Below are positions 7,283-64,000 of a stretch of DNA of 64,000 bases, in pieces. Position numbers and translations under genes: made by a program. Within the stretch, counting starts at the first letter, position 1, and each line of letters starts with the position of its first letter. This DNA comes from Malacoraja senta (lineage: Eukaryota): assembly GCA_038087875.1 (NCBI GenBank), contig CM075985.1, positions 25,048,001 to 25,112,000 of the forward strand, in the 5' to 3' direction. The notes under the pieces were generated by a model. It was not told the DNA's origin, ran no database searches, and saw only the letters and a list, made by a program, of their open reading frames with translations.

Positions 7283-7283
7283 T

Positions 7284-21685: not shown

Positions 21686-21872
21686 CTAGTTCTTGTATAA
21701 CAGGTATTCTTCCTCGTTTTCACATTTTTTGCACATGCAAGACTTGATGTCAGTATAAGCGTACGTTTCAGTATTTCCATCCTCACACTGTAGTTTTGCA
21801 CTCTTTTCTTCTGTCTCCCTTTCTTCACAGCACTGACATAAATGAACCATCCTCTTTGTTTTAGGGTCAAAT
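21686..21872 (-). CDS. Mucin last coding exon, CTCK C-terminal half
   Basis: ttcttccag| then FDPKTKRMVHLCQCCEERETEEKSAKLQCEDGNTETYAYTDIKSCMCKKCENEEEYLLYKN*. Confidence 0.93.
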
Positions 21873-36800: not shown

Positions 36801-38846
36801 AAGACATTTGAGAAAAACTCTTTTGGCATGTGAAAGCATGTAAATTGAGAAGCATTATCTTCATTATGTTCAAATATTTTCCTGAACATTAAGGTGATAT
36901 TGGGGAAAAATGAATGAACAGATATCGCAAGAAAGAAAAAGTGAAGCTCCAGCATTATTTTTAGAATGTTCAATGGGAAATGGGTTCCTCCTTGTAGTTA
37001 ACTGGAAAGGAAATTATTTGCAAAAATGACAATCAATCTGCAAATGTTCGAGTAGGTAATTTTGTGCAATTTAAAGCAAAGAAACTTTGAGAAAATTGAT
37101 AACGACTTGCAATTTGTTGTTTACCAGAGATTTAGTAGAGCTGTTGGTAAGACTGCACTGATGGATGTGACTGTCTACACCAAAGTTGAACAAACAACAT
37201 TCAAGTCAAAGAATATTCTCATCTCATCATTACTTACCAGTTGTTGAACTGGGAGTGGACACTGTTGTTCTACCCGCTGTTGGCGTAGTGGCTTCTGAGC
37301 AGAAAGAAAAAAATACTCAGAAATACTGCAACCGGTTTGTTTTCTTTGCGTTTTACTGCCACTTTATTCTTATAAGAATCAAGTGTAAATATAGAAATTA
37401 TTGGATATAAATGCTAAGTCGCTAGTTTTGCAAAATTCTACAATGTAAAGTGCAGTTGTTTCCCAATGAGTAACGAGTAGAAGATCTAATAGTAGTTCCC
37501 ATCGATATAAGGGACATAATTCACTGATATGATTTGACTAAAAAGTATGTCCCTTCAGTTCTCTTTTCTCTCGCTAAGTGGAGGACATTCCCGACATAAC
37601 TTGCTGGGCATGTTTTCTTACTCTGCATTTTACAACTCCAACATTCTTTTGTCTATGTTCTCACACTCAAAGTGCTCTAATAGACTCCCTCTGAAAAAGT
37701 AAAGTCGGAAAGCTCTGAAAGCATTCGTGAGAAACACAAATCTGAAAGAAGCTTAGATACAGCACGGAAACAGACCCTTCAGCCCATCGAGTCCATGCTG
37801 ACCAGTGATCCCTGTACACTAGCACTATCCTACACACTTCGGACAATTTACCAAAGCCAATTAACCTTCAGACCTGAATGTCTTTGGAATGTGGGAGGAA
37901 ACCGGAGCAGCCTGGGGACAGCCACATGGTCACGGGGAGAATGTACAAATTCTGTACAGACAGCACCCGTAGTCAGGATCAAACCTGGGTCTGTGGCATT
38001 GTAAGGCAGCAACTCTACTGCTGATCATTACTTGTTTAGAAATAAACTTTCCCTGATAATTCAGCAAATAGCAATAGCCAGAATACTAGTAAACATCCAT
38101 TGTCATGAAGGCTCCAGGAGAAACTAAATCCATTGAAATTTAAAATGCATCTAGTAACTGTCTTGGAGATGTGCAAGAGAAACATTTCATTGCACTGAGA
38201 AATGCAGATAATACACCAACAATGAGAATGTGGAGATTAAATGTTACTGAAGTGGAAAAAAGAAAGCCACATACTAGTAAAATGTTTCAAATAGTGCCAT
38301 CTCTTTCTTGAAATAAAGTTTCTCGAACGAGCTTTTCCAAAATAATTGCAATATTTCTGAAAATAGGAATTCTTTACACTGAGATACACAGAATACCCAA
38401 GAGGGACATGTCCTTTACTCTTGTTGCTGTAAAGTCAGAATATGAATTTATATGCACTCCTTATTTCCAACCACACAAGCATTTCTCTAATCATTTGAAT
38501 GAATTCATCACTTACCCGTTGTTGAAATGGAAGTAGTCAAAGTTGTAACTTGGAAAGAAACACAAAAACATTTTAAAATGGAGAAACATGTAGTGGATTG
38601 CAATCCAGCAGTATTGGGCGAGACACAATGCTATGTTATTTCAGTGGCTCATTTTCCATATCCCTCTGATGAACATCGAAGATTCAATACATCATAAGAG
38701 ATTAAACTTTGCCTTATCTCCATCTGTACATTTCAAACCCAAGCTTCACTCACTGGCTCTCAATGATGCCAGCTGAAGAAACATCCTAAGAAGGAAATCA
38801 AAGGGCAAAAGGGGGGCAGGAGATCACTCTGGCAGACGAGAGAGAG

Positions 38847-38899
<53 letters not shown>

Positions 38900-41800
38900 A
38901 ACTCCTTGGAAACCAACGTGATCATTGCTGTGTGAAGTCGAAGGAGATGGACAAACTCCATAATGAGTATTTTCCCTCTGTGTTTACTGTGGAGAAAGAT
39001 GCAAAGACTGGGGAACTTGGGATAGTTAAAGGAACTGTCTTGAGGACAGTCTGTATTACATTGGAAGAGATGCTGAACATCCAAAGGATTATCAAGATGG
39101 ATAAATCTCCCGGGCCTGATCAGAGATATCGGAGTATGCTGTGCGAAGCCAAATAATAAATTGCAGATGCCTGGCTGAAGTATACAAATCATCAATATAT
39201 ATGGGTGAGGTGCCGGAAGACTGGAGGGTGGCTAATGTTGTGCCACTATTTAAGAAGGGCTGCAAGGAAAAGCCTGAGAACTATAGACGAGTGAACCTAA
39301 TGACTGCGGTAGGCAAGTTACTGGAGCGTGTTCTGAAAGAAAAGATATGTATGCATTGGGACCGACAGGGGCTGATTAGGGATGGTCAGCATGGTTTTGT
39401 GAGTGCGATTTGCTTGTATTTCTAGCGAAACAAGCATTTCTAATGTCATTTGATCAAACACTTCACTTACCAAATGTTGAACTGAAAGGAGGCTGATGTG
39501 TTGTTGTGGTGGTAACTGGGGAAAAAAAAAAAATTGCTACAGCTTTCTGAGTACACCGATGATTTAAAACCTCTTCAGATATGAAGCTCCATCTTGTCTC
39601 GATTTGTAAAGGGCAAACTCTGATCTAAATCAACGCTCACTAGCTTTCTATTATGTCATATAGGGAAACATTCTGTCTACTATATTATTCAAGCTGGTGT
39701 ACTGAATGTGGAGAGAACAAAAATCGGTATTAATGAATAGTGAATTCAGATTTCTTCAATATCATAAATTTATGGTGGAGAACCTATCGACCTGCACCAC
39801 CAGGCCGGGCTGGAGCCACCACCACCTACCTGGCTGGTTCCAGACTGGGCCAAATGCCGCTATTGCCAGCCCACACCACTTCATTGGCCACTTCCAGGCA
39901 CCACCACCATCGCCATCGCCACTGCCAACCCTTTCCTGCACTCCTGCAGGCCACGACCAACGACTCCACTGAATCCTTACCTCTTCCTTGGGTGACAGCA
40001 GGCTGGAGCCATCATCACACCTGGATATTAGGACCAGTTCCAGTCTGAGAGTCTGAAGATGGGGACCTAAAATGTCATATATTCTTGTTTTCCAGAGATG
40101 CTGCCTGACCTGCTGAGTTACTTCAGCACTTTGTGTTCTTTTGTGTATTAACGTGTATCTGCGGTTGTTGTTTTTTTTGCATATTGGACACCATTCCCCC
40201 TCCCATCCACTGCCTGTTATAACTAGTCTTAACTACATTACAATATATCCAGAAATTAGGGATCTGTTTGAAGATGTTTACTAAGTAATTAGAAATATAT
40301 AAATATGCAAAGATACACAGATAGCATTTCTATCAGGTTCCACAGAAATTGTAAATTTACCGATCTTTGACATCAGGATAAAGATAGGTCTCGACCGAAA
40401 ACGCCACCTATTCCTTTTCTCCAGAGATGCTGCCTGACCCACCATTACTCCACCATTTTGTGCCAATCGTCAGTGTCAACCAGCATCTGCAGTGCCTTCC
40501 TAAGTATATCTAAACGATGAAGGAACATATTTCCCCCTTTGGGAGTTGACAATACAAGCTAATGTGTCACTGGTCTTGTGAACTTATACAATGAAAGAGG
40601 TTGGTACTTGTCCAATATGAAATTAATGGGCATTCTCATTACATGTTAAAGTGGCCCTGTGACGTTCCTTCCCAGACTGCTCTGCCTTGCACTCTGAACA
40701 GGTGTCACACCGTATCACATGATTTCCTTTTTCCCACCAATGCCATCCACATGAAGAGCATACACAGCACGTGGACAATGAATGGCTCAAACCTGAACAA
40801 ACGTGCTGAAAATATTGAAATAATGACCTACCCGTGCTTGTACTTTTACCGCTAACAAATAAAGGGAAATAGACACTTCAACCTCTCTTCAAATCTAAAT
40901 GCGACAGAAGTGAGAATTTCACAAATGTTTTAATCAAAACCACTGATGTTGAGGAATTTGTTTACTGTAACTACCCACCAGGTGTGCTATCTTCGATACA
41001 CGGATGAGGCAAGACCAGTTTAATAGCTTATGCTGAAGACATAATGAAACAAGTAATTCTCTCATTTACCGGATAATATAAGTTTGTACTGCTGGTAGTT
41101 GTGGTCTCTTCTGTTACGGACTGATAGCAAACTCGAAGTCAGAACAAAGTTAGGTCCCATTCAAGGAGCTTTCAGTGTCCTGTGCAGGTTAACCCTATGT
41201 TTTTGTCGCATATCACATTGACTCAAGAGAGTACAAGCCCAGTACCGACAAATGCTCACCATAAGTTAAACTACTCATTCCTGGGATCTTTCTTCTAAGC
41301 CTCCTCTGGACCCTCTCCAGAGCTAGCACATCCTTCCTCAGATATAGTGCCCAAAATTGCTCACAATATTCCAAATGTGGCCTTACCAGTGCCTTATAGA
41401 GCCTCACCATTACATTCCTATTTTTGTATAAAGCCCTCTTGAAATAAATGCAAGCATTGAGTTTGCTCTCTTTATTACTGATACGACTGGCAGATTAACT
41501 TTTTGGGAATCCTGTGCTAACACTCACAGGTCCCATTGCACCTCCAATTTCTGGATTCTCACCCCATTAGGTAAGTCTCCAGGTCCTGACATGATATTCC
41601 CTAGGACATTGAGGGAAGTTAGTGTAGAAATAGCAGGGGCTATGACAGAAATATTTCAAATATCATTAGAAACGGGAATGGTGCCGGAGGATTGGCGTAC
41701 TGCGCATTTTATTCCATTGTTTAAAAAGGGGTCTAAGAGTAAACCTAGCAATTATAGACTTTTTAGTTTGACGTCAGTGGTGGGCAAATTAATGGAAAGG

Positions 41801-44800
41801 ATACTTAGAGATAATTTATATAATCATCTGGATAAACAGGGTCTGATTAGGAACAGTCAACATGGATTTGTGCCTGGAAGGTCATGTTTGACTAAATTTT
41901 TTAAGAGGTTACTAGGGAAATTGATGAGGGTAAAGCGGTGGATGTTGTCTATATGGACTTCAGTAAGGCCTTTGACAAGGTTCCACATGGAAGGTTGGTT
42001 AAGAAGGTTCAATTGTTGGGTATTAATAGTGGAGTAGCAAGATGGATGCAACAGTGGCTGAATGGGAGATATCAGAGAGTAATGGTGGATAACTGTTTGT
42101 CAGGTTGGAGGCCGGTGACTAGTGGGGTGCCTCAGGGATCTGTGTTGGGTCCACTGTTGTTTGTATTATACATGAATGAACTGGATGAAGGTGTGGTAAA
42201 TTGGATTAGTAATTATGCAGATGATACTAAGATAGGTGGTGTTGTGGATAATGAAGTAGATTTTCAAAGTCTACAGAGAGATTTAGGCCATTTGGAAGAG
42301 TGGGCTGAAAGATGGCAGATGGAGTTTAATGCTGATAAGTGTGAGGTGCTACATCTTGGCAGGACAAATCAAAATAGGACGTACATGGTAAATGGTAGTG
42401 AATTGAGGAATGCAGTTGAACAGAGGGATCTAGGAATAACTGTGCATAATTCCCTGAAGGTGGAATCTCATGTAGATGGGGTGGTAAAGAAAGCTTTTGG
42501 TGTGCTGGCCTTTATAAATCAGAGCATTGCATATAGAAGTTGGGATGTAATGTTAAAATTGTACAAGGCATTGGTGAGGCGAATACTGGAATATGGTGTA
42601 CAATTCTGGTCGCCAAATTATAGGAAAGATGTCAACAAAACAGAGAGAGTACAGAAGGGATTTACTAGAATGTTGCCTGGGTTTCAGCACCTAAGTTACA
42701 GAGAAAGGTTGAACAAGATAGGTCTTTATTCTTTGGAGCGCAGAACGTTAAGGGGGGACCTGATAGAGGTCTTTAAAATTATGAGAGGGATAGACAGAGT
42801 GGACGTGGATAAGCTTTTTCCATTAAGAGTAGGGAAGATTCAAACAAGAGGACATGATTTGAGAATTAAGGGACAAAAGTTTAGGGGCAACATAAACTCA
42901 GAGAGTGGTAGCTGTGTGGAATGAGCTTCCAGTGGAAGTGGTGAAGGCAGGTTCGTTTTTATCATTTAAAAATAAATTGGATAGGTATATGGACGGGAAA
43001 GGAATGGAGGGTTCTGGTCTGAGTGCAGGTAGATGGAACTAGGTGAGAGTATGTGTTCGGCACGGACTAGAAGGGCCGAGATGACCTGTTTCTGTGCTGT
43101 GATTGTTATATGGTTATAAGGTTATGGTTATTTAGAAAATAGTCTAGCCTTTATTCCTACTACCAAAATGCATGACTCCACACTTTGCTACACGATATTC
43201 CATCTGCCATTTCCCTGCCAACTCTCCCAACCTGTCCAGGTCCTTCTGCAGAGTCCCTGCTTTCTCTACACTACCTGCCCCTCCACCTATTTTCGTATCA
43301 TCAGCAAACTTTGCCCCAAAGCCTTCAATCCATCGTCCAAATCATGAATATACAACATGAAGAGCAGCGGCCCCAGCACCAACCCATGCGGAATACCACT
43401 ATTCACTGGCAGGCAACCAGAAAAAGCTGCCTTTAGTGCCACTCTTTGTCTTCTGCAATCCAGCCAACATGCGATACATGCTAGTATCTGCCCTTTGATA
43501 CCATGGGCTCCCATCTTCTCAAGCAGCATAACGTGTGGCACCTTATCAAAGGCTTTCTGAAAATCTAAGAAAACAACATCTACGGACCTTTGCCTGTCCA
43601 GCTCCGATGCAGCAAACTGTCAATTCCACCTCTTCTTATAAAGGTATTCTGATATAATAATAGATAAATAAAGAGATGCAACGAGTTCAGTGAATGTGGT
43701 GTTGTAATCTGTGCTTAGATTTCATTTATTGTGTAAATGCAGAATGCATCTTTGAAACTAGCAAGGATTAATGCTGGACGTTTTGCAGTTTACAATACAT
43801 TTCGAAAAGACTTCGAAGTAAATGTAGAGGGTTGATTAGTAAGTTTGCAGGTGACGCCAAGATTGGCAGAGTCAGGAAAAGTTCACCTTTATAGAACTTT
43901 GGTTCGGCCGCATATGTATTGCGTGCAGTTTCGGTCTCCACATACTAGAAGGTTTTGAAGGCATGGATAGTGTATAGAACAGGTTGACAGAATGCTGCTT
44001 AATTGAGGATATTAGGTATTAGAAGAGGTTGGACAAAATTGGATTGTTATCTCGAGAAGATCGGAAGTTGAGGGGAAGTTGATGGTAGTGTATGGATATA
44101 CGAGAGGCATAAAGAGGATAGAGTGTTATTGCCAGGGTAGAAATGTCAAAGGCTAGAGGGCACAGCTTTAAGGTGAGTGGGGTAAAATATAAAATAAATT
44201 AACGTGGTAATATTTTTTTTTAAATGGAAGGAGCCTCATCTTCAGCACAGATATTGTGGGCTGGTCCTGTGTTCCACGGTTCTATTTGTTGATTTATAAT
44301 ATGTCTACCTGAGAGAGCAACTTTTGCAAAAATTCCAATGTTGAAAATTCTAGTTAAGGATTGACATGTGCTTGTATTTCTGGTGAAATCTATATTTCCA
44401 CTGTTATATGAACAACCCTTACCAGATGTGGAACTGGGAGAAGGCTGATGTGTTGGTGTTGTAGTTGTAACTGGGAAAACAAAAAGAAAAATTCAGCTGC
44501 TGCAGCTTTCTGATGTTGAGTACACTGATGATTGATAACCCCTTAAGAGGTGAAACTCCTTCTTATCTCAATCTGTAACAGGCAAACTCTGATCCAAATC
44601 AATGCTCACTAGCTTTCAATTATATCATATAGGGAAATATCTTATCCACTTCTATATTATTCAAGCAGGTGTACTGAATGTGGAGAAAACAAAATCATGA
44701 ATTTCATTGCATCCAGTAAATTACAATAATCTTGTACATTTCCACACAGACTGCTGCTCTTGATGAAACTGCGCTGGTGAATGCATTTGTGTATTCATAT

Positions 44801-53800: not shown

Positions 53801-56800
53801 ATGTCCAGGCTACTGTTTGTGGGCCTGTAGATAAGTCCCATTGGTGTCTTTTTACCCCTACAATTTCTTAGTTCTATCCATAGTGACACCACATCAACTG
53901 TTTTAGTTCACAATGATACTGTGGACTGAAGATATTGTGGATTGTGGTACTGTGCTGTACTGTTGTATTTGTAGATTTATAATATGTCAGCCTAAGAGTA
54001 CTACTTTCTCAAAAATTGCAACGTTGAAAATACTAAATAAGGATTGACATGTGCTTGCATTTCTAGTAAAACATGCATTTCTGATGTCATTTGAACAAAT
54101 ACTTCACTTACCAGATGTGGAACTGGAAGGAGGGTGATGTGTTGATGCAGTTGTAACTGGGGAAAAAAAAGAAAACATTCAGCTGCTGCAGCTTTCTGAT
54201 GTTGAGTACACTGATGATTGATAACACCTTAAGAGATGAAACTCCTTCTATCTCGATCAGTAACAGGCAAACTCTGATCCAAATCAATGCTCTAGCTTTC
54301 AATTATGTCATATAGAGAGATATCTTATCCACTTCTATATTATTCAAGCAGGTGTACTGAATGTGGAAAGAACAAAATCATGAATTTAAATGCATCCTGC
54401 AAATGACAATAATCTTGCACATTTCCACAGACTGCTGCTCTTGATGAACCTGCGCTGGTGAATGCATTCGTATAATCATATACGTAACAATGCAAATTTT
54501 CTTATATCATTTGAAGAAATCCATCACTTACCAGTTGTTGAATGATGAACAGACGGAGTGATTGTTGTACTTCCTGTTGTAATTGTAATTTGGAAACAGA
54601 AAGAAAAATAATCAAATTGAAGACATTTTTGACTACTGCAAAGTAGTCAAATTGATCATCGTCCACTATTTGGTTATTTTATAGACACTCAATGTTAGAG
54701 CAAAAATAAATTATTGCTTTTTAATATAACATGGTCTCCTTCAGGTGGATGTGGAAATGTCAACATTGGTACAAAAAACACTATAAAATGACTATAAAAA
54801 TCACTATTTAATCACTATAAAAAATCACTATTTAAAACCACTATTGAGGAAGGACATCCTTGTGATTGAGTCAGTGCAGCGTAGGATCACGAGATTGATC
54901 CCAGGGATGGCGGGGATGGCATATGAGGAAAGATTGAAAAAACTAGGCTTGTATTCACTGGAGTTTAGAAGGATGAGGGGGTTTCTTATAGCAACATATA
55001 AAATTATAAAAGGACTGGACAAGCTAGAGGCAGGAAAATTGTTCCCAATGTTGGGCGAGTCCAGAACCAGGAGCCACAGTCTTAGAATAAAGGGGAGGTC
55101 ATTTAAGACTGAGGTGAGAAAAAACATTTTCACCCAGTTAGTTCTGAATTTATGGAATTCCCTGACACAGAGGGCAGTGGAGGTCAAATCACTGGATGGA
55201 TTTAAGAGAGAGTTAGATAGAGCTCTAGGGTCTAGTGGAGTCAAGGGATATGGGGAGAAGACAGGCACGGGTTATTGATAGGGGACGATCAGCCATGATC
55301 ATAATGAATGGCGGTGCTGTTTCGAAGGGCCGAATGGCCTCCTCCTCCACCTATTTTCTTTGTTTCTATGTTACAATGTTTCTATGTTAATCATGTGATT
55401 TTTTTCAAAACTTTATTTACCTTACTAGACAAAATGGTGCTTGTTTTTTTGGCTATATCCTGAGGCAACTTGAAATGCAGATTTGAGTTGATGGATTTGT
55501 GTCAAATACTCTCATTGTTTGCTTTTGTAATTATTTGGTGATTCTATTGAAAAAAGAACTCACCACTTGTGGAACTGGTAGAGGGAGTTGTTGTTACTTT
55601 GGTTGTACTTGGCTCTGCTGACGAACAAGGGAAAGTATTAAAAAATGCTGCACACCAGCTCCATTTGCAACTAATTAGAGAGAGTGACTTGACAAACATG
55701 GTGAAGTGGATACGTCAAGTAATGATTAATGTTCAGTCCTCAAATACAACATAGCAAGGTTAGGTACCATGGAGCAAACCATCAGTTGCACCTGTTCTTA
55801 TAAATGTATTCTGACGTAATGATAGATAAATTAGGGGATGCATAGAGTACAGTTAACATGGGTGTCGCAATCTGTACACAGATTTAACTTGATTTGTAAA
55901 TGCAGAGTGCAACTTTCAAACAAGGATCGATGCTGAATTTTTTGCAATTTGCGATACATTTCTAAAAGTCTTGGAAGTACATGTAGATGGGTTGATTAGT
56001 AAGTTTGCAGATGACACCAAGATTGGTATAGTTCTGGAAGAGTTTGGAAGTCATGTAACAGCTTTGTAGATCTTTGGTTAGGCCACATTTGAAGTATTCA
56101 ATGCTCTAGCTTTCAATTATGTCATATAGGAAAATATCTTATCCACTTCTATATTATTCAAGCAGGTGTACTGAATGTGGAAAGAACAAAATCATGAATT
56201 TTATTGCATCCTGTAAATGACAATAATCTTGTACATTTCCACAGACTGCTGCTCTTCATGAAACTACGCTGGTGAATGCATTTGTGTATTCATATACGTA
56301 ACAATGCATTTTTTCTTATATCATTTGAAGAAATCCATCACTTACCAATTGTTGATTGATGAACAGACGGAGTGATTGTTGTACTTCCTGTTGTAATTGT
56401 AATTTGGAAACAGAAAGAAAAATCATCAAATTGAAGACATTTTTGACTACGGCAAAGCAGTAAAATTGATCATCATCCACTATTTGGTTATTTTAGAGAC
56501 ACTCAATGTTAGAGCAAAAATAAATTATTGTTTTTTAATATAACATGGTCTCCTTCAGGTGGATAAGTGGAAATGGCAACATTGGTACAAAAATCACTAT
56601 TTAATCATGTGACGTTTTTCAAAACTTTTTTTACCTTACTAGACAAAATGGTGCTTGATTTTTTTGGCTATATCCTGAGGCAACTTGAAATGCAGATTTG
56701 AGTTGATGGATTTGAGTCAAATACTCTCATTGTTTGCTTCTGTAATTATTTGGTGAATCTATTGAAAAAAGAACTCACCACTTGTGGAACTGGTAGAGGG

Positions 56801-59800
56801 AGTTGTTGTTATTTTGGTTGTAGTTGGCTCTGCTGGAGAACATGGGAAAGTATTAAAAAAATGCTGAATACCAGCTCCATTAGCAACTCATTAGAGAGAG
56901 TGACTTGACAAACATGGTGAAGTGGATACGAAAAGTAATGATTAATGTGCAGTCCTCAAATACAACATAGCAAGGTTAGGTACCATGGAGCAAACCATCA
57001 GTTGCACCTGTTCTTATAAATGTATTCTGCCATAATGATAGATAAATGAAAGGATGCATAGAGTACAGTGAACATGGGTGTCGCAATCTGTACACAGATT
57101 TAACTTGATTTGTAAATGTAGAGTGCAACTTTCAAACAAGGATCGATGCTGAATTTTTTGCAATTTGCGATACATTTCTAAAAGACTTGGAAGTAAGTGA
57201 AGATGGGTTGATTAGTAAGTTTGCAGATGACACCAAGATTGGTGTAGTTCTGGAAGAGTTTGGAAGTCATGTTACAGCTTTGTAGATCTTTGGTTAGGCC
57301 ACATTTGAAGTATTGCGTGCAGTTTTGGTCTCAACACACAGGAAGCATTTGAAGGCTTTGGAGAGTGTAAAGAACAGGTTGACCAGAATGTTGCCTAATG
57401 TAAGTTATTTGTTGTTCGGTTGGTAAAATTGGATTATTTTCTCGAGAAGATCGGAAGTTGAGGGAACACCTGATGGTAGTGTCTGGAAATATGAGACGCA
57501 TAAATAGGGTAGAGTGTTATTTCCATGGTAGAAATGTCAAAGGCTAGAGGGCACAGCTTTAAGGTGAGTGGGGGAAAATGTAATGGAGATTACCGTATTA
57601 AGATTTTTAACAATTAAAAAAAAATGTTCGGCACAGATACTGTGGACCGAAGATATTGTGGATTGTGGTCCTGCGCTGTACTGTTGTATTTGACGATTTA
57701 TAAAATGTCAGCCTAAGTGTACTACTTTCGCAAAAATTGCAACGTTGAAAATACTAAATAAGGATTGACATGTGCTTGCATTTCTAGTAAAACATGCATT
57801 TCTGATGTCATTTGAACAAATACTTCACTTACCAGATGTGGAACTGGGAGGAGGGGAATGTGTTGTTGATGCAGTTGTAACTGGGAAAACAAAAGTAAAA
57901 ATTCAGCTGCTGCAGCTTTCTGATGTTGAGTACACTGATGATTAATAACGCCTTAATAGATGAAACTCCTTCTATCTTGATCTGTAACAGGCAAACACTG
58001 ATCCAAATCAATGCTCACTAGCTTTCAATTTATGTCAGATAGGGAAATATCTTATCCACTTCTATATTATTCAAGCAGGTGTACTGAATGTGGAAAGAAC
58101 AAAATCATGAATTTAATTGCATCCTGTAAATGACAATAATCTTGTACATTTCCACAGACTGCTGCTCTTGATGACACTGCGCTGGTGAATGCATTCGTGT
58201 ATTCATATACGTAACAATGCAATTTTTCTTATATCATTTGAAGAAATCCATCACTTACCAGTTGTTGAATGATGAACAGATGGAGTGATTGTTGTACTTC
58301 CTGTTGTAATTATAATTTGGAAACAGAAAGAAAAATAATCAAATTGAAGACATTTTTGACTACTGCAAAGCAGTAAAATTGATCATCATCCACTATTTGG
58401 TTATTTTATAGACACTCAAGCTTAGAGCAAAAATAAATTATTGCTTTTTAATATAACATGGTCTCCTTCAGGTGGATGTGGAAATGTCAACATTGGTACA
58501 AAAATCACTATTTAATCATGTGACGTTTTTCAAAACTTTATTTACCTTACTAGACAAAATGGTGCTTGATTTTTTTGGCTATTTTCCTGAGGCAACTTGA
58601 AATGCAGATTTGAGTTGATGGATTTGTGTCAAATAATCTCATTGTTTTCTTTTGTAATTAATTGGTGATTCAATTGAAAAAAGAACTCACCACTTGTGAA
58701 ACTGGTAGAGGGAGTTGTTACTTTGGTTGTAGTTGGCTCTGCTGGAGAACAAGGGAAAGTATTAAAAAATGCTGCACATCAGCTCTATTTGCAGCTAATT
58801 AGAGAGAGTGACTTGACAAACATGGTGAAGTGGATACGAAAAGTAATGATTAATGTGCAGTCCTCAAATACATCATAGCAAGGTTAGGTACCATGGAGCA
58901 AACCATCAGTTGCACCTGTTCTTATAAATGGATTCTGACGTAATGATAGATAAATGAAGGGATGCATAGAGTACAGTGAACATGGGTGTCGCAATATGTA
59001 CACAGATTTAACTTGATTTGTAAATGCAGAGTGCAACTTTCAAACAAGGATCGATGCTGAATTTTTTGCAATTTGCGATACATTTCTAAAAGACTTGGAA
59101 GTAAATGAAGATGGGTTGATTAGTAAGTTTGAAGATGACACCAAGATTAGTGTAGTTCTGGAAGAGTTTGGAAGACATGTTACAGCTTTGTAGATCTTTG
59201 GTTAGGCCACATTTGAAGTATTGCGTGCAGTTTTGGTCTCAACACACAGGAAGCATTTGAAGGCTTTGGCGAGTGTAAAGAACAGGTTGACCAGAATGCT
59301 GCCTAATGTAAGATATTTGTTGTTCGGTTGATGAAATTGGATTATTTTCTCGAGAAGATCGGAAGTTGAGGGAACACCTGATGGTAGTGTCTGGAAATAT
59401 GAGACGCATAAATAGGGTAGTGTTATTTCCAGGGTAGAAATGTCAAAGGCTAGAGGACACAGCTTTAAGGTGAGTGGGGGAAAATGTAATGGAGTTTACC
59501 GTATTAAGATTTTTAACATTTTTTAAAAAATGATCGGCACAGATACTGTGGACTGAAGATATTGTGGATTGTGGTCCTGCACTGTACTGTTGTATTTGAC
59601 GATTTATAAAATGTCAGCCTAAGAGTACTACTTTCGCAAAAATTGCAACGTTGAAAATACTAAATAAGGATTGACATGTGCTTGCATTTCTAGTAAAACA
59701 TGCATTTCTGGTCATTTCAACAAATCACTTACCAGATGTGGAACTGGGAGGAGGGTGATGTGTTGTTGATGCAGTTGTAACTGGGAAAACAAAAGTAAAA

Positions 59801-62800
59801 ATTCAGCTGCTGCAGCTTTCTGATGTTGAGTACGCTGATGATTGATAACGCCTTAAGAGATGAAACTCCTTCTATCTCGATCTGTAACAGGCAAACTCTG
59901 ATCCAAATCAATGCTCTAGCTTTCAATTATGTCATATAGGGAAATATCTTATCCACTTCTATATTATTCAAGCAGGTGTACTGAATGTGGAAAGATCAAA
60001 ATCATGAATTTTATTGCATCCTGTAAATAACAATAATCTTGTACATTTCCACAGACTGCTGCTCTTGATGAAACTGCGCTGGTGAATGCATTCGTGTATA
60101 CATATACGTAACAATGCAATTGTTCTTATATCATTTGAAGAAATCCATCACTTACCAGTTGTTGAATGATGAACAGACGGAGTGATTGTTGTACTTCCTG
60201 TTGTAATTGTAATTTGGAAACAGAAAGAAAAATAATCAAATTGAAGACATTTTTGACTACTGCAAAGCAGTAAAATTGATCATCATCCACTATTTGGTTA
60301 TTTTATAGACACTCAATGTTAGAGCAAAAATAAATTATTGCTTTTTAATATAACATGGTCTCCTTCAGGTGGATGTGGAAATGTCAACATTGGTACAAAA
60401 ATCACTATAAAATGACTATAAAAATCACTATTTAATCACTATAAAAAATCACTATTTAAAACCACTATTGAGGAAGGACATCCTTGTGATTGAGTCAGTG
60501 CAGCGTAGGATCACGAGATTGATCCCAGGGATGGCAGGGATGGCATATGAGGAAAGATTGAAAAAACTAGGCTTGTATTCACTGGAGTTTAGAAGGATGA
60601 GGGGGTTTCTTATAGCAACATATAAAATTATAAAAGGACTGGACAAGCTAGAGGCAGGAAAATTGTTCCCAATGTTGGGCGAGTCCAGAACCAGGAGCCA
60701 CAGTCTTAGAATAAAGGGGAGGTCATTTAAGACTGAGGTGAGAAAAAACATTTTCACCCAGTTAGTTGTGAATTTATGGAATTCCCTGACACAGAGGGCA
60801 GTGGAGGTCAAATCACTGGATGGATTTAAGAGAGAGTTAGATAGAGCTCTAGGGTCTAGTGGAGTCAAGGGATATGGGGAGAAGACAGGCACGGGTTATT
60901 GATAGGGGACGATCAGCCATGATCATAATGAATGGCGGTGCTGTTTCGAAGGGCCGAATGGCCTCCTCCTCCACCTATTTTCTTTGTTTCTATGTTGCAA
61001 TGTTTCTATGTTAATCATGTGACGTTTTTCAAAACTTTATTTACCTTACTAGACACAATGGTGCTTGATTGTTTTGGCTATTTCCTGAGGCAACTTGAAA
61101 TGCAGATTTGAGTTGATGGATTTGTGTCAAATACTCTCATTGTTTGCTTTTGTAATTATTTGGTGATTCTATTGAAAAAAGAACTCACCACTTGTGGAAC
61201 TGGTAGAGGGAGTTGTTGTTACTTTGGTTGTACTTGGCTCTGCTGACGAACAAGGGAAAGTATTAAAAAATGCTGCACACCAGCTCCATTTGCAACTAAT
61301 TAGAGAGAGTGACTTGACAAACATGGTGAAGTGGATACGACAAGTAATGATTAATGTGCAGTCCTCAAATACAACATAGCAAGGTTAGGTACCATGGAGC
61401 AAACCATCAGTTGCACCTGTTCTTATAAATGTATTCTGACGTAATGATAGATAAATTAGGGGATGCATAGAGTACAGTGAACATGAGTGTCGCAATCTGT
61501 TCACAGATTTAACTTGATTTGTAAATGCAGAGTGCAACTTTCAAACAAGGATCGATGCTGAATTTTTTGCAATTTGCGATACATTTCTAAAAGTCTTGGA
61601 AGTACATGTAGATGGGTTGATTAGTAAGTTTGCAGATGACACCAAGATTGGTATAGTTCTGGAAGAGTTTGGAAGTCATGTAACAGATTTGTAGATCTTT
61701 GGTTAGGCCACATTTGAAGTATTCAATGCTCTAGCTTTCAATTATGTCATATAGGGAAATATCTTATCCACTTCTATATTATTCAAGCAGGTATACTGAA
61801 TGTGGAAAGAACAAAATCATGAATTTTATTGCATCCTGTAAATGACAATAATCTTGTACATTTCCACAGACTGCTGCTCTTCATGAAACTACGCTGGTGA
61901 ATGCATTCGTGTATTCATATACGTAACAATGCAATTTTTCTTGTATCATTTGAAGAAATCCATCACTTACCAGTTGTTGAATGATGAACAGACGGAGTGA
62001 TTGTTGTACTTCCTGTTGTAATTGTAATTTGGAAACAGAAAGAAAAATCATCAAATTGAAGACATTTTTGACTACGGCAAAGCAGTAAAATTGATCATCA
62101 TCCACTATTTGGTTATTTTAGAGACACTCAATGTTAGAGCAAAAATAAATTATTGTTTTTTAATATAACATGGTCTCCTTCAGGTGGATAAGTGGAAATG
62201 GCAACATTGGTACAAAAATCACTATTTAATCATGTGACGTTTTTCAAAACTTTTTTTACCTTACTAGACAAAATGGTGCTTGATTTTTTTGGCTATATCC
62301 TGAGGCAACTTGAAATGCAGATTTGAGTTGATGGATTTGAGTCAAATACTCTCATTGTTTGCTTCTGTAATTATTTGGTGAATCTATTGAAAAAAGAACT
62401 CACCACTTGTGGAACTGGTAGAGGGAGTTGTTGTTACTTTGGTTGTAGTTGGCTCTGCTGGAGAACAAGGGAAAGTATTAAAAAAATGCTGAATACCAGC
62501 TCCATTAGCAACTAATTAGAGAGAGTGATTTGACAAACATGGTGAAGTGGATACGAAAAGTAATGATTAATGTGCAGTCCTCAAATACAACATAGCAAGG
62601 TTAGGTACCATGGAGCAAACCATCAGTTGCACCTGTTCTTATAAATGTATTCTGACGTAATGATAGATAAATGAAAGGATGCATAGAGTACAGTGAACAT
62701 GGGTGTCGCAATCTGTACACAGATTTAACTTGATTTGTAAATGCAGAGTGCAACTTTCAAACAAGGATCGATGCTGAATTTTTTGCAATTTGCGATACAT

Positions 62801-63925
62801 TTCTAAAAGACTTGGAAGTAAGTGAAGATGGGTTGATTAGTAAGTTTGCAGATGACACCAAGATTGGTGTAGTTCTGGAAGAGTTTGGAAGTCATGTAAC
62901 AGCTTTGTAGATCTTTGGTTAGGCCACATTTGAAGTATTGCGTGCAGTTTTGGTCTCAACACACAGGAAGCATTTGAAGGCTTTGGAGAGTGTAAAGAAC
63001 AGGTTGACCAGAATGCTGCCTAATGTAAGTTATTTGTTGTTCGGTTGGTAAAATTGGATTATTTTCTCGAGAAGATCGGAAGTTGAGGGAACACCTGATG
63101 GTAGTGTCTGGAAATATGAGACGCATAAATAGGGTAGAGTGTTATTTCCATGGTAGAAATGTCAAAGGCTAGAGGGCACAGCTTTAAGGTGAGTGGGGAA
63201 AAATGTAATGGAGATTACCGTATTAAGATTTTTAACAATTAAAAAAAAATGTTCGGCACAGATACTGTGGACCGAAGATATTGTGGATTGTGGTCCTGCG
63301 CTGTACTGTTGTATTTGACGATTTATAAAATGTCAGCCTAAGTGTACTACTTTCGCAAAAATTGCAACGTTGAAAATACTAAATAAGGATTGACATGTGC
63401 TTGCATTTCTAGTAAAACATGCATTTCTGATGTCATTTGAACAAATACTTCACTTACCAGATGTGGAACTGGGAGGAGGGGAATGTGTTGTTGATGCAGT
63501 TGTAACTGGGAAAACAAAAGTAAAAATTCAGCTGCTGCAGCTTTCTGATGTTGAGTACACTGATGATTAATAACGCCTTAATAGATGAAACTCCTTCTAT
63601 CTTGATCTGTAACAGGCAAACACTGATCCAAATCAATGCTCACTAGCTTTCAATTTATGTCAGATAGGGAAATATCTTATCCACTTCTATATTATTCAAG
63701 CAGGTGTACTGAATGTGGAAAGAACAAAATCATGAATTTAATTGCATCCTGTAAATGACAATAATCTTGTACATTTCCACAGACTGCTGCTCTTGATGAC
63801 ACTGCGCTGGTGAATGCATTCGTGTATTCATATACGTAACAATGCAATTTTTCTTATATCATTTGAAGAAATCCATCACTTACCAGTTGTTGAATGATGA
63901 ACAGACGGAGTGATTGTTGTACTTC
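21686..63925 (-). CDS. Gel-forming mucin (MUC2/MUC5-like), spliced, 5'-partial (continues beyond the window)
   Basis: Exon chain with compatible phases: PTS microexons > CysD > VWD (GDPH) > C8 > TIL > CTCK > stop. Confidence 0.93.
22028..23645 (-). mobile_element. Full-length Tc1 transposon (1618 bp) in the last mucin intron
   Basis: TA TSDs and ~210 bp TIRs starting CAGTGGCTTGCAAAAGT. Confidence 0.96.
22246..23266 (-). pseudogene. Tc1 DD34E transposase (premature TGA at 23138-23140; frameshift near 22895)
   Basis: Starts MKPKEHTRQVRDKVVEKFK; has WSDETK, QQDNDPKH and SPDLNPIE motifs. Confidence 0.93.
23858..23957 (-). CDS. Mucin exon, CTCK N-terminal half
   Basis: tttcag|..CKTTVVHKIVGNGTCQTDIEMKQCVGNCFSST..|gtaagt; 100 nt, phase 1 to phase 2. 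Confidence 0.92.
24547..24647 (-). CDS. Mucin exon, TIL second half (probable GC donor)
   Basis: ccttttcag|..TVEPGTHTSEAGCFCPDGMMMTENSTECVSACE..|gcaagt. Confidence 0.85.
24761..24830 (-). CDS. Mucin exon, TIL first half
   Basis: tttcaag|..HTCPHNLVYKACPNKTDDRCVN..|gtaagt; 70 nt. Confidence 0.9.
26950..27810 (+). mobile_element. CR1 5' region/ORF1 remnant with a ~130 bp tandem duplication
   Basis: Zinc-finger-like VCRMWEARD...CGKCVQ plus leucine-zipper remnants near 27450-27620. Duplicated gcaatcaaagagaagcagggagaagagcttattg. Confidence 0.6.
27811..28645 (-). mobile_element. CR1 3' end (5'-truncated)
   Basis: ORF 27934..28470 (LYRALVRPHLEYCVQFWSP), 3' UTR and (CTATTGT)n tail. Confidence 0.92.
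28646..29760 (+). mobile_element. CR1 3' end (5'-truncated), back-to-back with the previous copy
   Basis: ORF 29109..29426 and 3' UTR ending cctattgtct. Confidence 0.92.
30597..30766 (-). CDS. Mucin exon, C8 domain
   Basis: ctattcag|..PFEKCRQKVGIEHFKETCIYDNCGPNVTCSSLDAAADECFKLGFCVDWRPYTNGSC..|gtaagt; 170 nt. Confidence 0.94.
31286..31645 (-). mobile_element. CR1 3' end fragment
   Basis: ORF 31436..31633 (FFTQRVVNLWNSLP) plus 3' UTR. Confidence 0.88.
32329..32521 (-). CDS. Mucin exon, VWD end / C8 linker
   Basis: tag|..PCSRRNGTGVSSDCCSTTASEWIYNDIKKPYC...HPICDLITG..|gtaagt; 193 nt, phases fit both neighbours. Confidence 0.85.
32615..32795 (-). CDS. Mucin exon, VWD C-terminal part
   Basis: tttcacag|LTVNGHDMKIPYF...FLTNTQGQC G|gtatgt; 181 nt. 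Confidence 0.92.
33360..33589 (-). CDS. Mucin exon, VWD N-terminal part with GDPH
   Basis: [31 protein letters not shown]...ENNK|gtaagt; 230 nt. Confidence 0.95.
33685..33862 (-). CDS. Mucin exon, Cys-rich region before VWD
   Basis: ctctttag|CNETWTTKCKNYTC...GKRPVKIITDNGCCYRLECV|gtcagt; 178 nt. Confidence 0.9.
35944..36335 (-). CDS. Mucin exon, CysD (WxxW) domain plus short PTS; absent from the ORF track
   Basis: tttcag|..LVCDGTWSAWSNQNSP...IECEAVG...VTCNLKKGLIC...CLDYKIRVCC...CVCETTPRRK|gtaagt. Confidence 0.94.
37238..37294 (-). CDS. Mucin PTS microexon (57 nt)
   Basis: ctgctcag|..ATTPTAGRTTVSTPSSTT G|gtaagt; phase 1-1. Confidence 0.85.
37755..38024 (-). mobile_element. HE1-like tRNA-derived SINE (elasmobranch V-SINE type)
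   Basis: tRNA-like head, central ggaggaaaccggag...ggggagaatgtacaaa domain and CR1-like tail. Family recognised by eye. Confidence 0.75.
38516..38548 (-). CDS. Mucin PTS microexon (33 nt)
   Basis: ctttccaag|..TTLTTSISTT G|gtaagt; phase 1-1. Confidence 0.8.
38836..38897. repeat. (GA)n microsatellite
   Basis: Direct reading. Confidence 0.95.
38930..39400 (+). mobile_element. CR1 ORF2 internal fragment
   Basis: KSPGPD, VPEDWRVANVVPLFKKG and QHGF motifs. Confidence 0.85.
39471..39515 (-). CDS. Mucin PTS microexon, type A-like (45 nt)
   Basis: ttccccag|..TTTTTHQPPFSSTF G|gtaagt. Confidence 0.83.
41213..43590 (-). mobile_element. CR1 fragment split by a younger opposite-strand CR1
   Basis: Minus ORFs 41213..41410 and 43287..43541. 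The host reads ccccattag [insert] tttagaaaatagtct. Confidence 0.8.
41571..43130 (+). mobile_element. CR1 3' 1.55 kb (RT), nested
   Basis: ORF 41938..42924 with GVPQGSVLGP and YADDTK; (GGTTAT)n tail. Confidence 0.92.
44423..44470 (-). CDS. Mucin PTS microexon A0 (48 nt)
   Basis: ttttcccag|..TTTTPTHQPSPSSTS G|gtaagg. Confidence 0.83.
45183..45236 (-). CDS. Mucin PTS microexon C0 (54 nt)
   Basis: ttctccag|..EPTTTKVTTTPSTSSIS G|gtgagt. Confidence 0.83.
45621..46068. mobile_element. PIF/Harbinger-like MITE
   Basis: GC-rich 448 bp insert absent from paralogous units, with TAA TSD and imperfect TIRs AGGCTCTGTCTTATG / CGTGAGACAGGCCTT. Confidence 0.8.
46250..51009 (-). mobile_element. DIRS1-type tyrosine-recombinase retrotransposon, complete termini, decayed ORFs
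   Basis: Internal region ~46482-46590 is complementary to both termini, and ATT is present at both ends. RT (NGLTSVPRKFTK), RNase H (INNTTAMACIN), methyltransferase-like (VVPDGSTQPWFP) and weak YR remnants. Absent from paralogous units. Confidence 0.9.
51247..53890 (-). mobile_element. CR1 LINE, ~2.6 kb, 5'-truncated
   Basis: ORFs 52251..53390, 52002..52250 and 51534..52001 cover RT to the C-terminus; 3' UTR and tail present. Confidence 0.95.
54112..54156 (-). CDS. PTS microexon A1 (45 nt)
   Basis: ccccag|..TTASTHHPPSSSTS G|gtaagt. Confidence 0.83.
54532..54573 (-). CDS. PTS microexon B1 (42 nt)
   Basis: acaacag|..STTITPSVHHSTT G|gtaagt; weak acceptor. Confidence 0.65.
54843..55387 (+). 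mobile_element. CR1 3' end inserted in a repeat unit
   Basis: ORF 54844..55278 and (TTTCTATG)n tail; absent in sister units. Confidence 0.92.
55564..55617 (-). CDS. PTS microexon C1 (54 nt)
   Basis: cag|CAG..EPSTTKVTTTPSTSSTS G|gtgagt. Confidence 0.82.
56346..56387 (-). CDS. PTS microexon B2 (42 nt)
   Basis: STTITPSVHQSTI; gtaagt donor. Confidence 0.62.
56779..56832 (-). CDS. PTS microexon C2 (54 nt)
   Basis: EPTTTKITTTPSTSSTS; gtgagt donor. Confidence 0.82.
57833..57880 (-). CDS. PTS microexon A3 (48 nt)
   Basis: TTASTTHSPPPSSTS; canonical splice sites. Confidence 0.83.
58259..58300 (-). CDS. PTS microexon B3 (42 nt)
   Basis: STTITPSVHHSTT; gtaagt donor. Confidence 0.65.
58691..58741 (-). 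CDS. PTS microexon C3 (51 nt)
   Basis: One-codon-shorter variant EPTTTKVTTPSTSFTS; frame preserved. Confidence 0.82.
59733..59780 (-). CDS. PTS microexon A4 (48 nt)
   Basis: TTASTTHHPPPSSTS; canonical splice sites. Confidence 0.83.
60156..60197 (-). CDS. PTS microexon B4 (42 nt)
   Basis: STTITPSVHHSTT; gtaagt donor. Confidence 0.65.
60467..61012 (+). mobile_element. CR1 3' end, duplicate of 54843-55387
   Basis: Same truncation point and near-identical ORF (60468..60902). Confidence 0.92.
61189..61242 (-). CDS. PTS microexon C4 (54 nt)
   Basis: EPSTTKVTTTPSTSSTS; gtgagt donor. Confidence 0.82.
61971..62012 (-). CDS. PTS microexon B5 (42 nt)
   Basis: STTITPSVHHSTT; gtaagt donor. Confidence 0.65.
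62404..62457 (-). CDS. PTS microexon C5 (54 nt)
   Basis: EPTTTKVTTTPSTSSTS; gtgagt donor. Confidence 0.82.
63458..63505 (-). CDS. PTS microexon A6 (48 nt)
   Basis: TTASTTHSPPPSSTS; canonical splice sites. Confidence 0.83.
63884..63925 (-). CDS. PTS microexon B6 (42 nt)
   Basis: STTITPSVHHSTT; gtaagt donor. Confidence 0.65.
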
Positions 63926-64000
63926 CTGTTGTAATTATAATTTGGAAACAGAAAGAAAAATAATCAAATTGAAGACATTTTTGACTACTGCAAAGTAGTC

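What the first reader, a model, noticed from the sequence alone, without database searches (positions are those of the whole stretch)
37238..63925. Mucin PTS domain built from an array of symmetric phase-1 microexon cassettes
Seen: at least 19 tiny segments (33-57 nt) on the minus strand, each bounded by AG and G|GTAAG or G|GTGAG. Each is a multiple of 3 and phase 1-1, and each encodes a Thr/Ser/Pro peptide. Three main types recur: A TTASTTHHPPPSSTS, B STTITPSVHHSTT and C EPTTTKVTTTPSTSSTS. Length variants differ only by whole codons (45/48 and 51/54), while the flanking introns carry arbitrary indels, which suggests selection on frame. Known: mammalian MUC2/MUC5AC/MUC5B encode most of the PTS region in very large exons, whereas cassette-type repeat exons occur in frog integumentary mucins. 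Inference: any subset can be skipped in frame, so one locus could tune mucin length and O-glycan load both by splicing and by copy number. The ORF track does not show this.
Basis: partly seen in the sequence, partly recalled or inferred. Interest (0 to 1): 0.85.

Follow-up and report, generated by a model that had tools for sequence, protein, structure and literature searches.

The report
Skate mucin core of micro-exons
The sugar-carrying core of a skate or ray mucus-protein gene is encoded here by 20 tiny frame-compatible exons that multiplied as genomic repeats; this layout is real and conserved, but it is already known from chicken and frog mucins and is present in shark gene models.

Summary
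On the minus strand, 37238-63925 holds 20 segments of 33-57 nt. Each is bounded by AG and G|GTAAGT or G|GTGAGT, has a length divisible by 3, is phase 1-1 and encodes a Thr/Ser/Pro-rich peptide. The same scan finds none elsewhere in the window, on the other strand or in 200 shuffles.

The segments lie directly upstream of the CysD, VWD, C8 and cystine-knot exons of a MUC2/MUC5-type gel-forming mucin. The syntenic RefSeq model in sawfish (Pristis pectinata mucin-2-like) splices the orthologous 57-nt exon and a 60-nt cassette onto the CysD exon exactly as predicted. Between the two species the exons are 78-88% identical and their flanks 36-70%. All 7 exon length changes are multiples of 3, against 5 of 21 intron indels (p about 7e-4). 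Two dead cassettes show what relaxed constraint looks like.

No RNA run holding this gene was found, so splicing here is inferred, and exon skipping is untested. Catshark and smooth-hound RefSeq isoforms do differ by single cassettes and single residues.

Multi-exon PTS domains are published for chicken Muc13, chicken MUC2 and Xenopus Otogl. This scan has already noted the same design at several other loci of this genome.

Verdict: a new member of a known kind.

The parts
63884..63925 (-). Micro-exon B (42 nt, GSTTITPSVHHSTT), phase 1-1
63458..63505 (-). Micro-exon A (48 nt, VTTASTTHSPPPSSTS)
62404..62457 (-). Micro-exon C (54 nt, or 51 from the second AG of CAGCAG; AEPTTTKVTTTPSTSSTS)
61971..62012 (-). 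Micro-exon B (42 nt)
61189..61242 (-). Micro-exon C (54/51 nt)
60156..60197 (-). Micro-exon B (42 nt)
59733..59780 (-). Micro-exon A (48 nt, VTTASTTHHPPPSSTS)
58691..58741 (-). Micro-exon C with a 3-nt in-frame deletion (51/48 nt)
58259..58300 (-). Micro-exon B (42 nt)
57833..57880 (-). Micro-exon A (48 nt)
56779..56832 (-). Micro-exon C (54/51 nt)
56346..56387 (-). Micro-exon B (42 nt, GSTTITPSVHQSTI)
55564..55617 (-). Micro-exon C (54/51 nt)
54532..54573 (-). Micro-exon B (42 nt)
54112..54156 (-). Micro-exon A with a 3-nt in-frame deletion (45 nt)
53915..64000 (-). Young higher-order tandem repeat. The period is about 5,625 bp with eight exons (B A C B C B A C). Neighbouring copies are 98.3% identical and the three subunits of about 1.9 kb are about 95% identical. 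It runs off the window end.
   Evidence: k-mer depth 440-495 against 18-25 for single-copy DNA
45183..45236 (-). Old micro-exon C (54/51 nt), about 90% identical to the young C units
44849..44891 (-). Dead B cassette. The donor GTAAGT has become GTCTGT, and T/P codons have changed to W, R and K.
44423..44470 (-). Old micro-exon A (48 nt, VTTTTPTHQPSPSSTS)
41070..41120 (-). Dead cassette, homologous to the sawfish 60-nt exons. It has a 5-nt deletion behind the acceptor and has lost its donor.
39471..39515 (-). Old micro-exon A (45 nt, VTTTTTHQPPFSSTF), about 80% identical to the young units
38516..38548 (-). Micro-exon B' (33 nt, VTTLTTSISTT). It keeps the ancestral CCAAG acceptor and has a 24-nt in-frame deletion relative to the sawfish 57-nt exon.
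37238..37294 (-). Micro-exon X (57 nt, EATTPTAGRTTVSTPSSTT; CAGAAG tandem acceptor). It is the ortholog of the sawfish exon L001:10708-10764, which is part of a RefSeq model.
35944..36335 (-). CysD exon (392 nt, phase 1->0), with a short PTS tail
   Evidence: (PF13330, E 4e-16)
21716..33862 (-). C-terminal exons of the same gene: D4 VWD (about 33363-33587), C8 (about 30577-30765) and the cystine knot (about 23836-23961 and 21716-21880). All mapped exons are intact.

Best explanation
The stretch is the 3' part of the central PTS (mucin) domain of a MUC2/MUC5-type gel-forming mucin gene of a skate or ray, transcribed from the minus strand.

The domain is not one giant exon. It is a chain of micro-exons of 33-57 nt, each encoding 11-19 residues rich in Thr, Ser and Pro, which would be O-glycosylated. 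Every intron in the chain is phase 1, so the exons join in frame with each other and with the phase-1 acceptor of the CysD exon.

The chain grew by unequal crossing-over of genomic units that carry exons together with their introns.
1. A [B A C] unit of about 1.9 kb was triplicated.
2. The middle copy lost its A exon and gained a transposon fragment.
3. The resulting 5.6-kb unit of eight exons was then amplified further. Two copies lie in the window and probably several more lie beyond it.

Cassettes are also lost. Two copies have mutated donors and/or frameshifts.

Shown here: the anatomy, the gene identity, the frame constraint, the cross-species conservation, and the use of the orthologous exons in a sawfish RefSeq model.

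Inferred: that these exons are spliced into mRNA in this species, that the peptides are glycosylated, and that most cassettes are included constitutively, with some NAGNAG variation and occasional skipping.
For: - Anatomy and chance control.
- Gene identity: Pfam finds CysD, VWD, C8 and Cys_knot on the same strand directly downstream. The best solved relatives are the MUC5B, MUC5AC and MUC2 CysD domains and the MUC2 C-terminal region. All mapped C-terminal exons are intact.
- Ortholog: the Pristis pectinata locus L001 is syntenic, with introns that align at 68-75% identity. Its RefSeq protein XP_051890114.1 (accession) reads MTITETTTTEATTGKTTSR | EVRTPTESRKTVSIPSSTT | EPVCNG..., which is exactly the 60-nt and 57-nt AG..GTAAGT segments joined to the CysD exon.
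- A neighbouring sawfish mucin, XP_051890192.1 (accession), has its PTS region in phase 1-1 exons of 51, 60 (seven of them), 57 and 54 nt.
- Cross-species identity of exon against flanks is 84% vs 59/70% (X), 78-83% vs 36-60% (C) and 88% vs 58-64% (B').
- All 7 exon length changes are multiples of 3, against 5 of 21 intron indels; Fisher p = 6.7e-4.
- Negative controls inside the locus: the dead cassettes have lost their donors, and one carries a 5-nt deletion.
- Amplification history.
- Independent DNA contigs of the same species match the window with no differences.
Against: - No transcript evidence exists for this gene in this species. Both run searches returned only DNA runs, and no read or contig shows a splice joint.
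- A search with the joined A+B+C peptide found no database protein.
- Within the window, exon substitution rates are barely lower than intron rates, as expected for a low-complexity domain.
- ACA/ACT-rich codon runs favour 3-nt slippage mechanically, which weakens the indel argument.
- RefSeq models in relatives are predictions, not cloned cDNAs.
Confidence: 0.85

Rival explanations
1. The cassettes form a regulated combinatorial system in which tissue- or state-specific skipping of subsets tunes mucin length and O-glycan load. It comes on top of germline copy-number change.
For: - All introns are phase 1, so any skip stays in frame.
- C and X exons carry tandem NAGNAG acceptors.
- RefSeq lists at least 39 isoforms of Scyliorhinus canicula mucin-2-like and at least 48 of a Mustelus asterias mucin. 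These differ by +/-1 residue (A or E at cassette borders), by single cassettes of 15, 20 or 21 aa, and by multi-cassette blocks.
- FIM-C.1 polymorphism is attributed to alternative splicing (PMC7177656).
- The same idea was raised for chicken Muc13 (PMC1552070).
Against: - Nothing was tested in this species, because no RNA was found.
- Isoform models across near-identical repeat exons can come from ambiguous short-read junction mapping.
- Donors match the consensus almost perfectly and pyrimidine tracts are long, which favours constitutive inclusion.
- An earlier follow-up on a neighbouring array of this genome (s1-174995, not checked by me) reported splicing as predicted but no mixing and matching.
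Confidence: 0.15
2. The array, or the whole gene copy, is a decaying paralogue that is no longer expressed. On this view the intact-looking cassettes are simply too young to have broken.
For: - No RNA run holds the CysD exon.
- Two cassettes are already dead.
- The young copies are 95-98% identical, so their intactness says little.
Against: - The old, diverged cassettes (about 80-90% identity) and X, B' and C keep their splice sites, frame and composition.
- They are better conserved than their flanks against sawfish.
- All mapped C-terminal exons are intact.
- The sawfish ortholog is annotated as a coding gene.
Confidence: 0.07
3. The array is a non-coding tandem repeat or transposon-derived array that only looks like exons by chance.
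For: The region is a higher-order tandem repeat with transposon fragments in it.
Against: - The scan gives 0 hits in controls against 19 in the region.
- The segments share strand and frame with the adjacent CysD exon.
- The orthologous segments are used in a RefSeq model.
- Conservation peaks on the segments themselves.
Confidence: 0.01

Closest known systems
Chicken Muc13 PTS domain (Lang, Hansson and Samuelsson 2006, PMC1552070)
   Same: The PTS domain is split into many exons and each exon encodes one repeat unit. The authors proposed that splicing could vary the domain length within one individual, and suggested the design may be ancestral.
   Different: Muc13 is a transmembrane SEA mucin with one repeat type of 20 aa. 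Here the gene is a secreted CysD/VWD/CTCK gel-forming mucin with three interleaved cassette types of 14-18 aa, arranged as a higher-order genomic repeat.
Chicken MUC2 (PMC3549977) and Xenopus tropicalis Otogl (PMC5789918)
   Same: Both are gel-forming mucins whose central mucin domain is multi-exonic. In chicken MUC2 the repeats span exons 32-45, and Otogl is described as 'multiexonic'.
   Different: The chicken repeat units are 69 aa, much larger than here. Otogl lacks typical CysD domains. Neither paper describes micro-exons under 60 nt or phase symmetry.
RefSeq models of elasmobranch mucin-2-like and mucin-5AC-like genes (Pristis pectinata XP_051890114.1 and XP_051890192.1; Scyliorhinus canicula XP_038667154.1 and its other isoforms)
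   Same: They share the gene family, the cassette size of 51-60 nt and phase 1-1. The X exon is orthologous, and B- and C-like cassettes are homologous. Many isoforms differ by single cassettes.
   Different: These are predictions in other species, and I found no paper describing them. The sawfish ortholog model is truncated: it starts at an internal Met in a micro-exon, while at least 6 cassette-like exons lie unannotated upstream (L001:1261-8879).
Human MUC2, MUC5AC, MUC5B and MUC6 (PMC9712336)
   Same: They share the protein architecture of PTS interrupted by CysD, then D4 and a cystine knot.
   Different: In human the whole mucin domain is one exon of 9-13 kb, and its length varies by VNTR inside that exon, not by exon number.
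Frog integumentary mucin FIM-C.1 (Hauser and Hoffmann 1992, as cited in PMC7177656)
   Same: It is a secreted mucin whose size heterogeneity is attributed to alternative splicing of repetitive parts. Its modules are of class 1-1 (PMC7350206, stated there for TFF modules).
   Different: It is built with TFF modules and is not a MUC2/5 ortholog. I could not read the primary paper, so its exon structure is unchecked.
Titin PEVK exons (from my own knowledge, not checked here)
   Same: It works the same way on paper: dozens of short, frame-compatible repeat exons whose differential inclusion sets the length of an unstructured segment.
   Different: It is an unrelated intracellular protein without glycosylation. 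It is only a functional analogy for the untested splicing hypothesis.

Membership tests
Gel-forming mucin of the MUC2/MUC5AC/MUC5B type | CysD (Mucin2_WxxW) domain within or next to the PTS region | tested here: met
   PF13330, E 4e-16, over 36335-35944. The best solved matches are the MUC5B, MUC5AC and MUC2 CysD domains.
Gel-forming mucin of the MUC2/MUC5AC/MUC5B type | C-terminal D4 (VWD-C8) assembly and a cystine knot | tested here: met
   VWD E 2.9e-15, C8 E 2e-9 and Cys_knot E 4.5e-6, on the same strand and in order. The exons are intact. The VWD exon matches the MUC2 C-terminal region among its best hits.
Gel-forming mucin of the MUC2/MUC5AC/MUC5B type | PTS domain rich in Thr, Ser and Pro | tested here: met
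   The joined cassettes give 315 aa with 72% S+T+P. This rests on predicted splicing.
Gel-forming mucin of the MUC2/MUC5AC/MUC5B type | N-terminal D1-D2-D'-D3 assemblies | not testable with these tools
   The 5' part of the gene lies beyond the window end.
Gel-forming mucin of the MUC2/MUC5AC/MUC5B type | Dense O-glycosylation and secretion as a polymer | not testable with these tools
   This needs biochemistry.
Multi-exon PTS domain with one repeat unit per exon (chicken Muc13 type) | Each repeat unit is bounded by its own splice acceptor and donor | tested here: met
   All 20 of 20 have AG with a pyrimidine tract and G|GTRAG(T/G).
Multi-exon PTS domain with one repeat unit per exon (chicken Muc13 type) | Units join in frame (same intron phase throughout) | tested here: met
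   All are phase 1-1 with lengths divisible by 3. Length changes occur only in whole codons.
Multi-exon PTS domain with one repeat unit per exon (chicken Muc13 type) | Transcript evidence that the units are spliced together | tested here: inconclusive
   No RNA run was found for this gene. The orthologous exons are joined in the sawfish RefSeq model, which is a prediction.
Alternatively spliced cassette-exon array | Isoforms that differ by inclusion of individual cassettes | tested here: inconclusive
   Not testable in this species with the runs found. RefSeq isoforms of catshark and Mustelus relatives differ by cassettes of 15-21 aa, but mapping artefacts are possible.
NAGNAG tandem acceptors | Two AGs 3 nt apart at the acceptor, both usable in frame | tested here: met
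   CAGCAG is present at all six C exons and CAGAAG at X. Use of both sites is not tested. Shark isoforms differ by +/-1 residue (A or E) in the PTS region.

The most novel reading that the evidence does not exclude
Elasmobranch gel-forming mucins use their micro-exon arrays as a regulated splicing rheostat. Tissue- or challenge-specific inclusion of cassette subsets, plus NAGNAG choice, would set the rod length and glycan density of the mucus polymer within one animal. Unequal crossing-over of exon-bearing units would set the range available to each lineage.
Probability: 0.15. Interest if true: 0.6.

Novelty: new member of a known kind. Interest (0 to 1): 0.3.

Why it matters
The locus shows that a MUC2/MUC5-type mucin in cartilaginous fish encodes its glycosylated core in dozens of phase-1 micro-exons rather than in one giant exon, as in mammals.

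This supports the suggestion made for Muc13 in 2006 that the split design may be ancestral. If so, mammalian giant PTS exons could be derived by intron loss.

The locus also gives a clean, datable picture of how such a domain evolves:
- It grows by amplification of exon-plus-intron units.
- It is pruned by donor loss and frameshift.
- It is retuned by an in-frame acceptor shift of 15 nt.

In practice, ORF-based or default gene finders miss or truncate these genes. The sawfish ortholog model starts inside the array.

If cassette choice proves to be regulated, the locus would offer a way to vary mucus properties within one individual. That part is untested.

Tried and rejected
- RNA evidence. 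Two run searches, on 33300-37400 and on the CysD exon alone, returned only DNA runs of this species and close relatives. X1 and X2, labelled 'RNA?', behaved as low-coverage DNA that matched only transposons. No splice joints were seen in either read-laying.
- Close-relative comparison on 44200-45400. Paralogous high-depth contigs and about 5% divergence leave too few exon sites to test constraint. Its only useful result is the depth ratio, which suggests about 20 copies of the young units.
- Protein search with the joined A+B+C peptide (49 aa): no candidate. No annotated protein of this species carrying the cassettes was recovered.
- DNA for the shark loci of P0012, P0001 and P0155 could not be fetched. 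Exon borders of the shark isoform differences are therefore unverified.
- Within-window exon against intron substitution rates show only a slight difference, so I did not use them as evidence.
- I rejected the chance or non-coding repeat reading.
- I rejected the idea that the cassettes are fragments of a former large exon broken up by transposons. The introns between cassettes are themselves homologous among units and between species, and each boundary carries conserved splice signals.
- Literature searches for shark mucin exon structure and for 'phase 1-1' mucin exons found no direct description.
Full report
**1. What is in the sequence**

A composition scan of all six frames finds Thr/Ser/Pro-rich open stretches clustered on the minus strand between 37.2 and 63.9 kb. 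I then required an AG acceptor, a GT[AG]AG donor, a length divisible by 3 and an open phase-1 frame. That gives 20 distinct segments of 33-57 nt.

- A: 45 or 48 nt, VTTASTTH(H/S)PPPSSTS
- B: 42 nt, GSTTITPSVHHSTT
- C: 54 or 51 nt, (A)EPTTTKVTTTPSTSSTS

There are also two singletons, B' (33 nt) and X (57 nt). Every donor is G|GTAAGT or G|GTGAGT, with one G|GTAAGG. Acceptors follow tracts that are 75-85% pyrimidine. In the young B copies the tract lies 18 nt upstream, with no intervening AG.

The same scan gives 19 loci in 37-64 kb on the minus strand. It gives none on the rest of that strand, none on the plus strand and none in 200 shuffles. The copies are paralogues, however, so they represent roughly six independent lineages.

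**2. The gene**

Directly downstream on the same strand lie these exons:
- A CysD exon at 36335-35944 (PF13330, E 4e-16).
- A D4 VWD exon and a C8 exon.
- Two cystine-knot exons.

The best solved relatives are the MUC5B, MUC5AC and MUC2 CysD domains and the MUC2 C-terminal region.

The CysD exon has a phase-1 acceptor, so X joins it as ...SSTT|ELVCDG. It is 392 nt long and ends in phase 0. It is therefore not itself symmetric, which is a small correction to my own first reading. All C-terminal exons mapped with a sawfish protein are intact.

Joined, the 20 cassettes give 315 aa with 37.5% Thr, 23.2% Ser and 11.4% Pro.

**3. Repeat history**

Self-comparison shows a higher-order repeat with a period of about 5,625 bp, carrying eight exons in the order B A C B C B A C. 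Neighbouring copies are 98.3% identical. Each is made of three subunits of about 1.9 kb that are about 95% identical. The middle subunit has lost its A exon and gained a transposon fragment.

Older copies lie downstream:
- C and A at 45.2 and 44.4 kb (82-90% identity)
- A at 39.5 kb (about 80%)
- B' and X

The long introns of 8.9 and 4.9 kb hold LINE reverse-transcriptase fragments.

In DNA contigs of the same species, contigs matching the young units have k-mer depth 440-495, against 18-25 for single-copy contigs. This suggests about 20 copies of the young units. It agrees with an earlier first-stage note (s1-193204) that the array continues for about 45 kb beyond the window. It is an estimate, not a count.

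**4. Are they exons?**

No RNA run holding this gene was found, and no splice joint appears in what could be laid. The case is therefore comparative.

(a) *A syntenic ortholog uses them.* A profile-free search with the CysD exon led to Pristis pectinata mucin-2-like XP_051890114.1. Its locus is syntenic with window 21.2-37.3 kb, and the introns align at 68-75%. That RefSeq model begins MTITETTTTEATTGKTTSR | EVRTPTESRKTVSIPSSTT | EPVCNG. These pieces are exactly a 60-nt and a 57-nt AG..GTAAGT segment joined to the CysD exon. The 57-nt exon is the ortholog of X.

(b) *A second sawfish mucin has the same design.* The neighbouring XP_051890192.1 encodes its PTS region in phase 1-1 exons of 51, 60 (seven of them), 57 and 54 nt, separated by introns of 1-7 kb. 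The design is thus general in these genes and is already present in public gene models.

(c) *The exons are better conserved than their flanks.* The table gives identity between the window and sawfish.

| Cassette | Exon identity | Flank identity |
|---|---|---|
| X | 84% | 59% and 70% |
| C | 78-83% | 36-60% |
| B' | 88% | 58-64% |

(d) *Length changes preserve the frame.* Seven exon length changes are all multiples of 3:
- A loses 3 nt.
- C loses 3 nt.
- Window C is 3 nt shorter than the sawfish C-like exon.
- B' loses 24 nt.
- The young B copies lose 15 nt.
- One sawfish X paralogue gains 3 nt.
- Another sawfish X paralogue loses 21 nt.

In the largest paralogue alignment, 16 of 21 intron indels are not multiples of 3. 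Fisher p = 6.7e-4. One caveat applies: ACA/ACT runs favour 3-nt slippage.

(e) *An acceptor shift kept the frame.* B' and the sawfish exon use CCAAG|TTACA. The young B copies read CCAAA and use the next AG, 15 nt downstream, which is in frame.

(f) *Dead cassettes serve as internal controls.* The B copy at 44891-44849 has the donor GTCTGT and carries W, R and K in place of T, P and T. The homologue of the sawfish 60-nt exon at about 41120-41070 has a 5-nt deletion behind its acceptor and no donor. This is how these sequences look when they are not maintained.

Within the window, substitution rates in live exons are only slightly below those of introns. That is expected for a low-complexity domain, and I do not count it as evidence.

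**5. Is cassette choice used?**

The anatomy permits any in-frame skip. C and X also carry NAGNAG acceptors (CAGCAG and CAGAAG). I could not test usage here.

There is indirect support. RefSeq lists at least 39 isoforms of Scyliorhinus canicula mucin-2-like (2421-2945 aa) and at least 48 of a Mustelus asterias mucin (3046-3104 aa). Compared pairwise, they differ in three ways:
- by +/-1 residue (A or E), the pattern a NAGNAG acceptor would give
- by single cassettes of 15, 20 or 21 aa
- by blocks of 37-235 aa

These could be real. They could also be artefacts of short-read junctions mapped among near-identical exons. I could not fetch the DNA to check the exon borders. An earlier follow-up on a neighbouring array of this genome (s1-174995, unchecked) reported correct splicing but no mixing and matching.

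I rate regulated tuning at about 0.15. Some low-level skipping or NAGNAG variation is considerably more likely.

**6. What is known**

- Human MUC2, MUC5AC, MUC5B and MUC6 have the mucin domain in one exon (PMC9712336).
- Chicken Muc13 has one repeat per exon, and its authors proposed both splicing-based length control and an ancestral origin for the design (PMC1552070).
- In chicken MUC2 the repeats span exons 32-45 (PMC3549977).
- The Xenopus Otogl mucin domain is multi-exonic (PMC5789918).
- FIM-C.1 heterogeneity is ascribed to alternative splicing (PMC7177656).

I found no paper on exon structure in shark or ray mucins. The survey of Lang et al. 2016 covers only Callorhinchus gene counts.

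This scan has also noted the same design at several other loci of this genome. Two of these were followed up and judged to be of a known kind.

**7. Verdict**

The structural interpretation is supported, and the splicing-tuning inference is untested. This is a new member of a known kind. It has instructive evolutionary detail (higher-order amplification, acceptor shift, cassette death) but no new principle.

Noticed in passing
L001:1261-8879 (Pristis pectinata, upstream of the annotated start at 10001): At least six further cassette-like phase 1-1 exons (1261-1302, 1585-1641, 2440-2496, 4895-4954, 5424-5483, 8844-8879) lie upstream of the RefSeq model XP_051890114.1. That model starts at an internal Met inside a micro-exon, so the public model looks 5'-truncated.
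   Followed up: partly
window 44200-45400 (run X4): Contigs of the same species that match the young cassette units have k-mer depth 440-495, against 18-25 for single-copy contigs. This implies about 20 genomic copies of the units, far more than the 4-6 in the window.
   Followed up: partly
proteins P0155, P0253-P0266 (Scyliorhinus canicula) and P0169, P0267-P0280 (Mustelus asterias): RefSeq carries dozens of isoforms per shark mucin gene. They differ by single residues at cassette borders, by single cassettes of 15-21 aa and by larger blocks. This is either real combinatorial splicing or a systematic annotation artefact on repeat exons.
   Followed up: partly
window 22249-23022 (-): An open 258-aa Tc1/mariner-type DDE_3 transposase ORF (E 5e-13) sits in the intron between the two cystine-knot exons.
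   Followed up: no
window 41905-42921 (+) and 43290-43619 (-): LINE reverse-transcriptase fragments (RVT_1, E 2e-24 and 3e-11) fill the 4.9-kb intron between the cassettes at 44.4 and 39.5 kb.
   Followed up: no
window 54773-54845 and 60397-60469: A short AAAAATCACTAT-type tandem repeat (period 11-24) lies at the edge of a transposon-tail fragment. That fragment is inserted once per 5.6-kb unit and is a useful marker that the insertion predates the last amplification.
   Followed up: no
window 38838-38897: A (GA)30 microsatellite lies in the intron between the A exon at 39.5 kb and B'. Reads appear cut there.
   Followed up: no
window 1-8500: A GC-rich (50-54%) LTR-retrotransposon-like block carries an integrase ORF (rve, E 1e-13, 3656-4831, minus strand) and repeated terminal segments. 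Another first-stage note covers it.
   Followed up: no
window 11583-13446 (+): A run of ORFs includes a CCHC zinc-knuckle motif and looks gag-like. The 294-aa ORF has no Pfam hit.
   Followed up: no
window 44417-44418 (run X5): In a closely related species the donor of the old A cassette (GTAAGG here) reads GTAATT, which is weaker still. This cassette may be on its way out.
   Followed up: no
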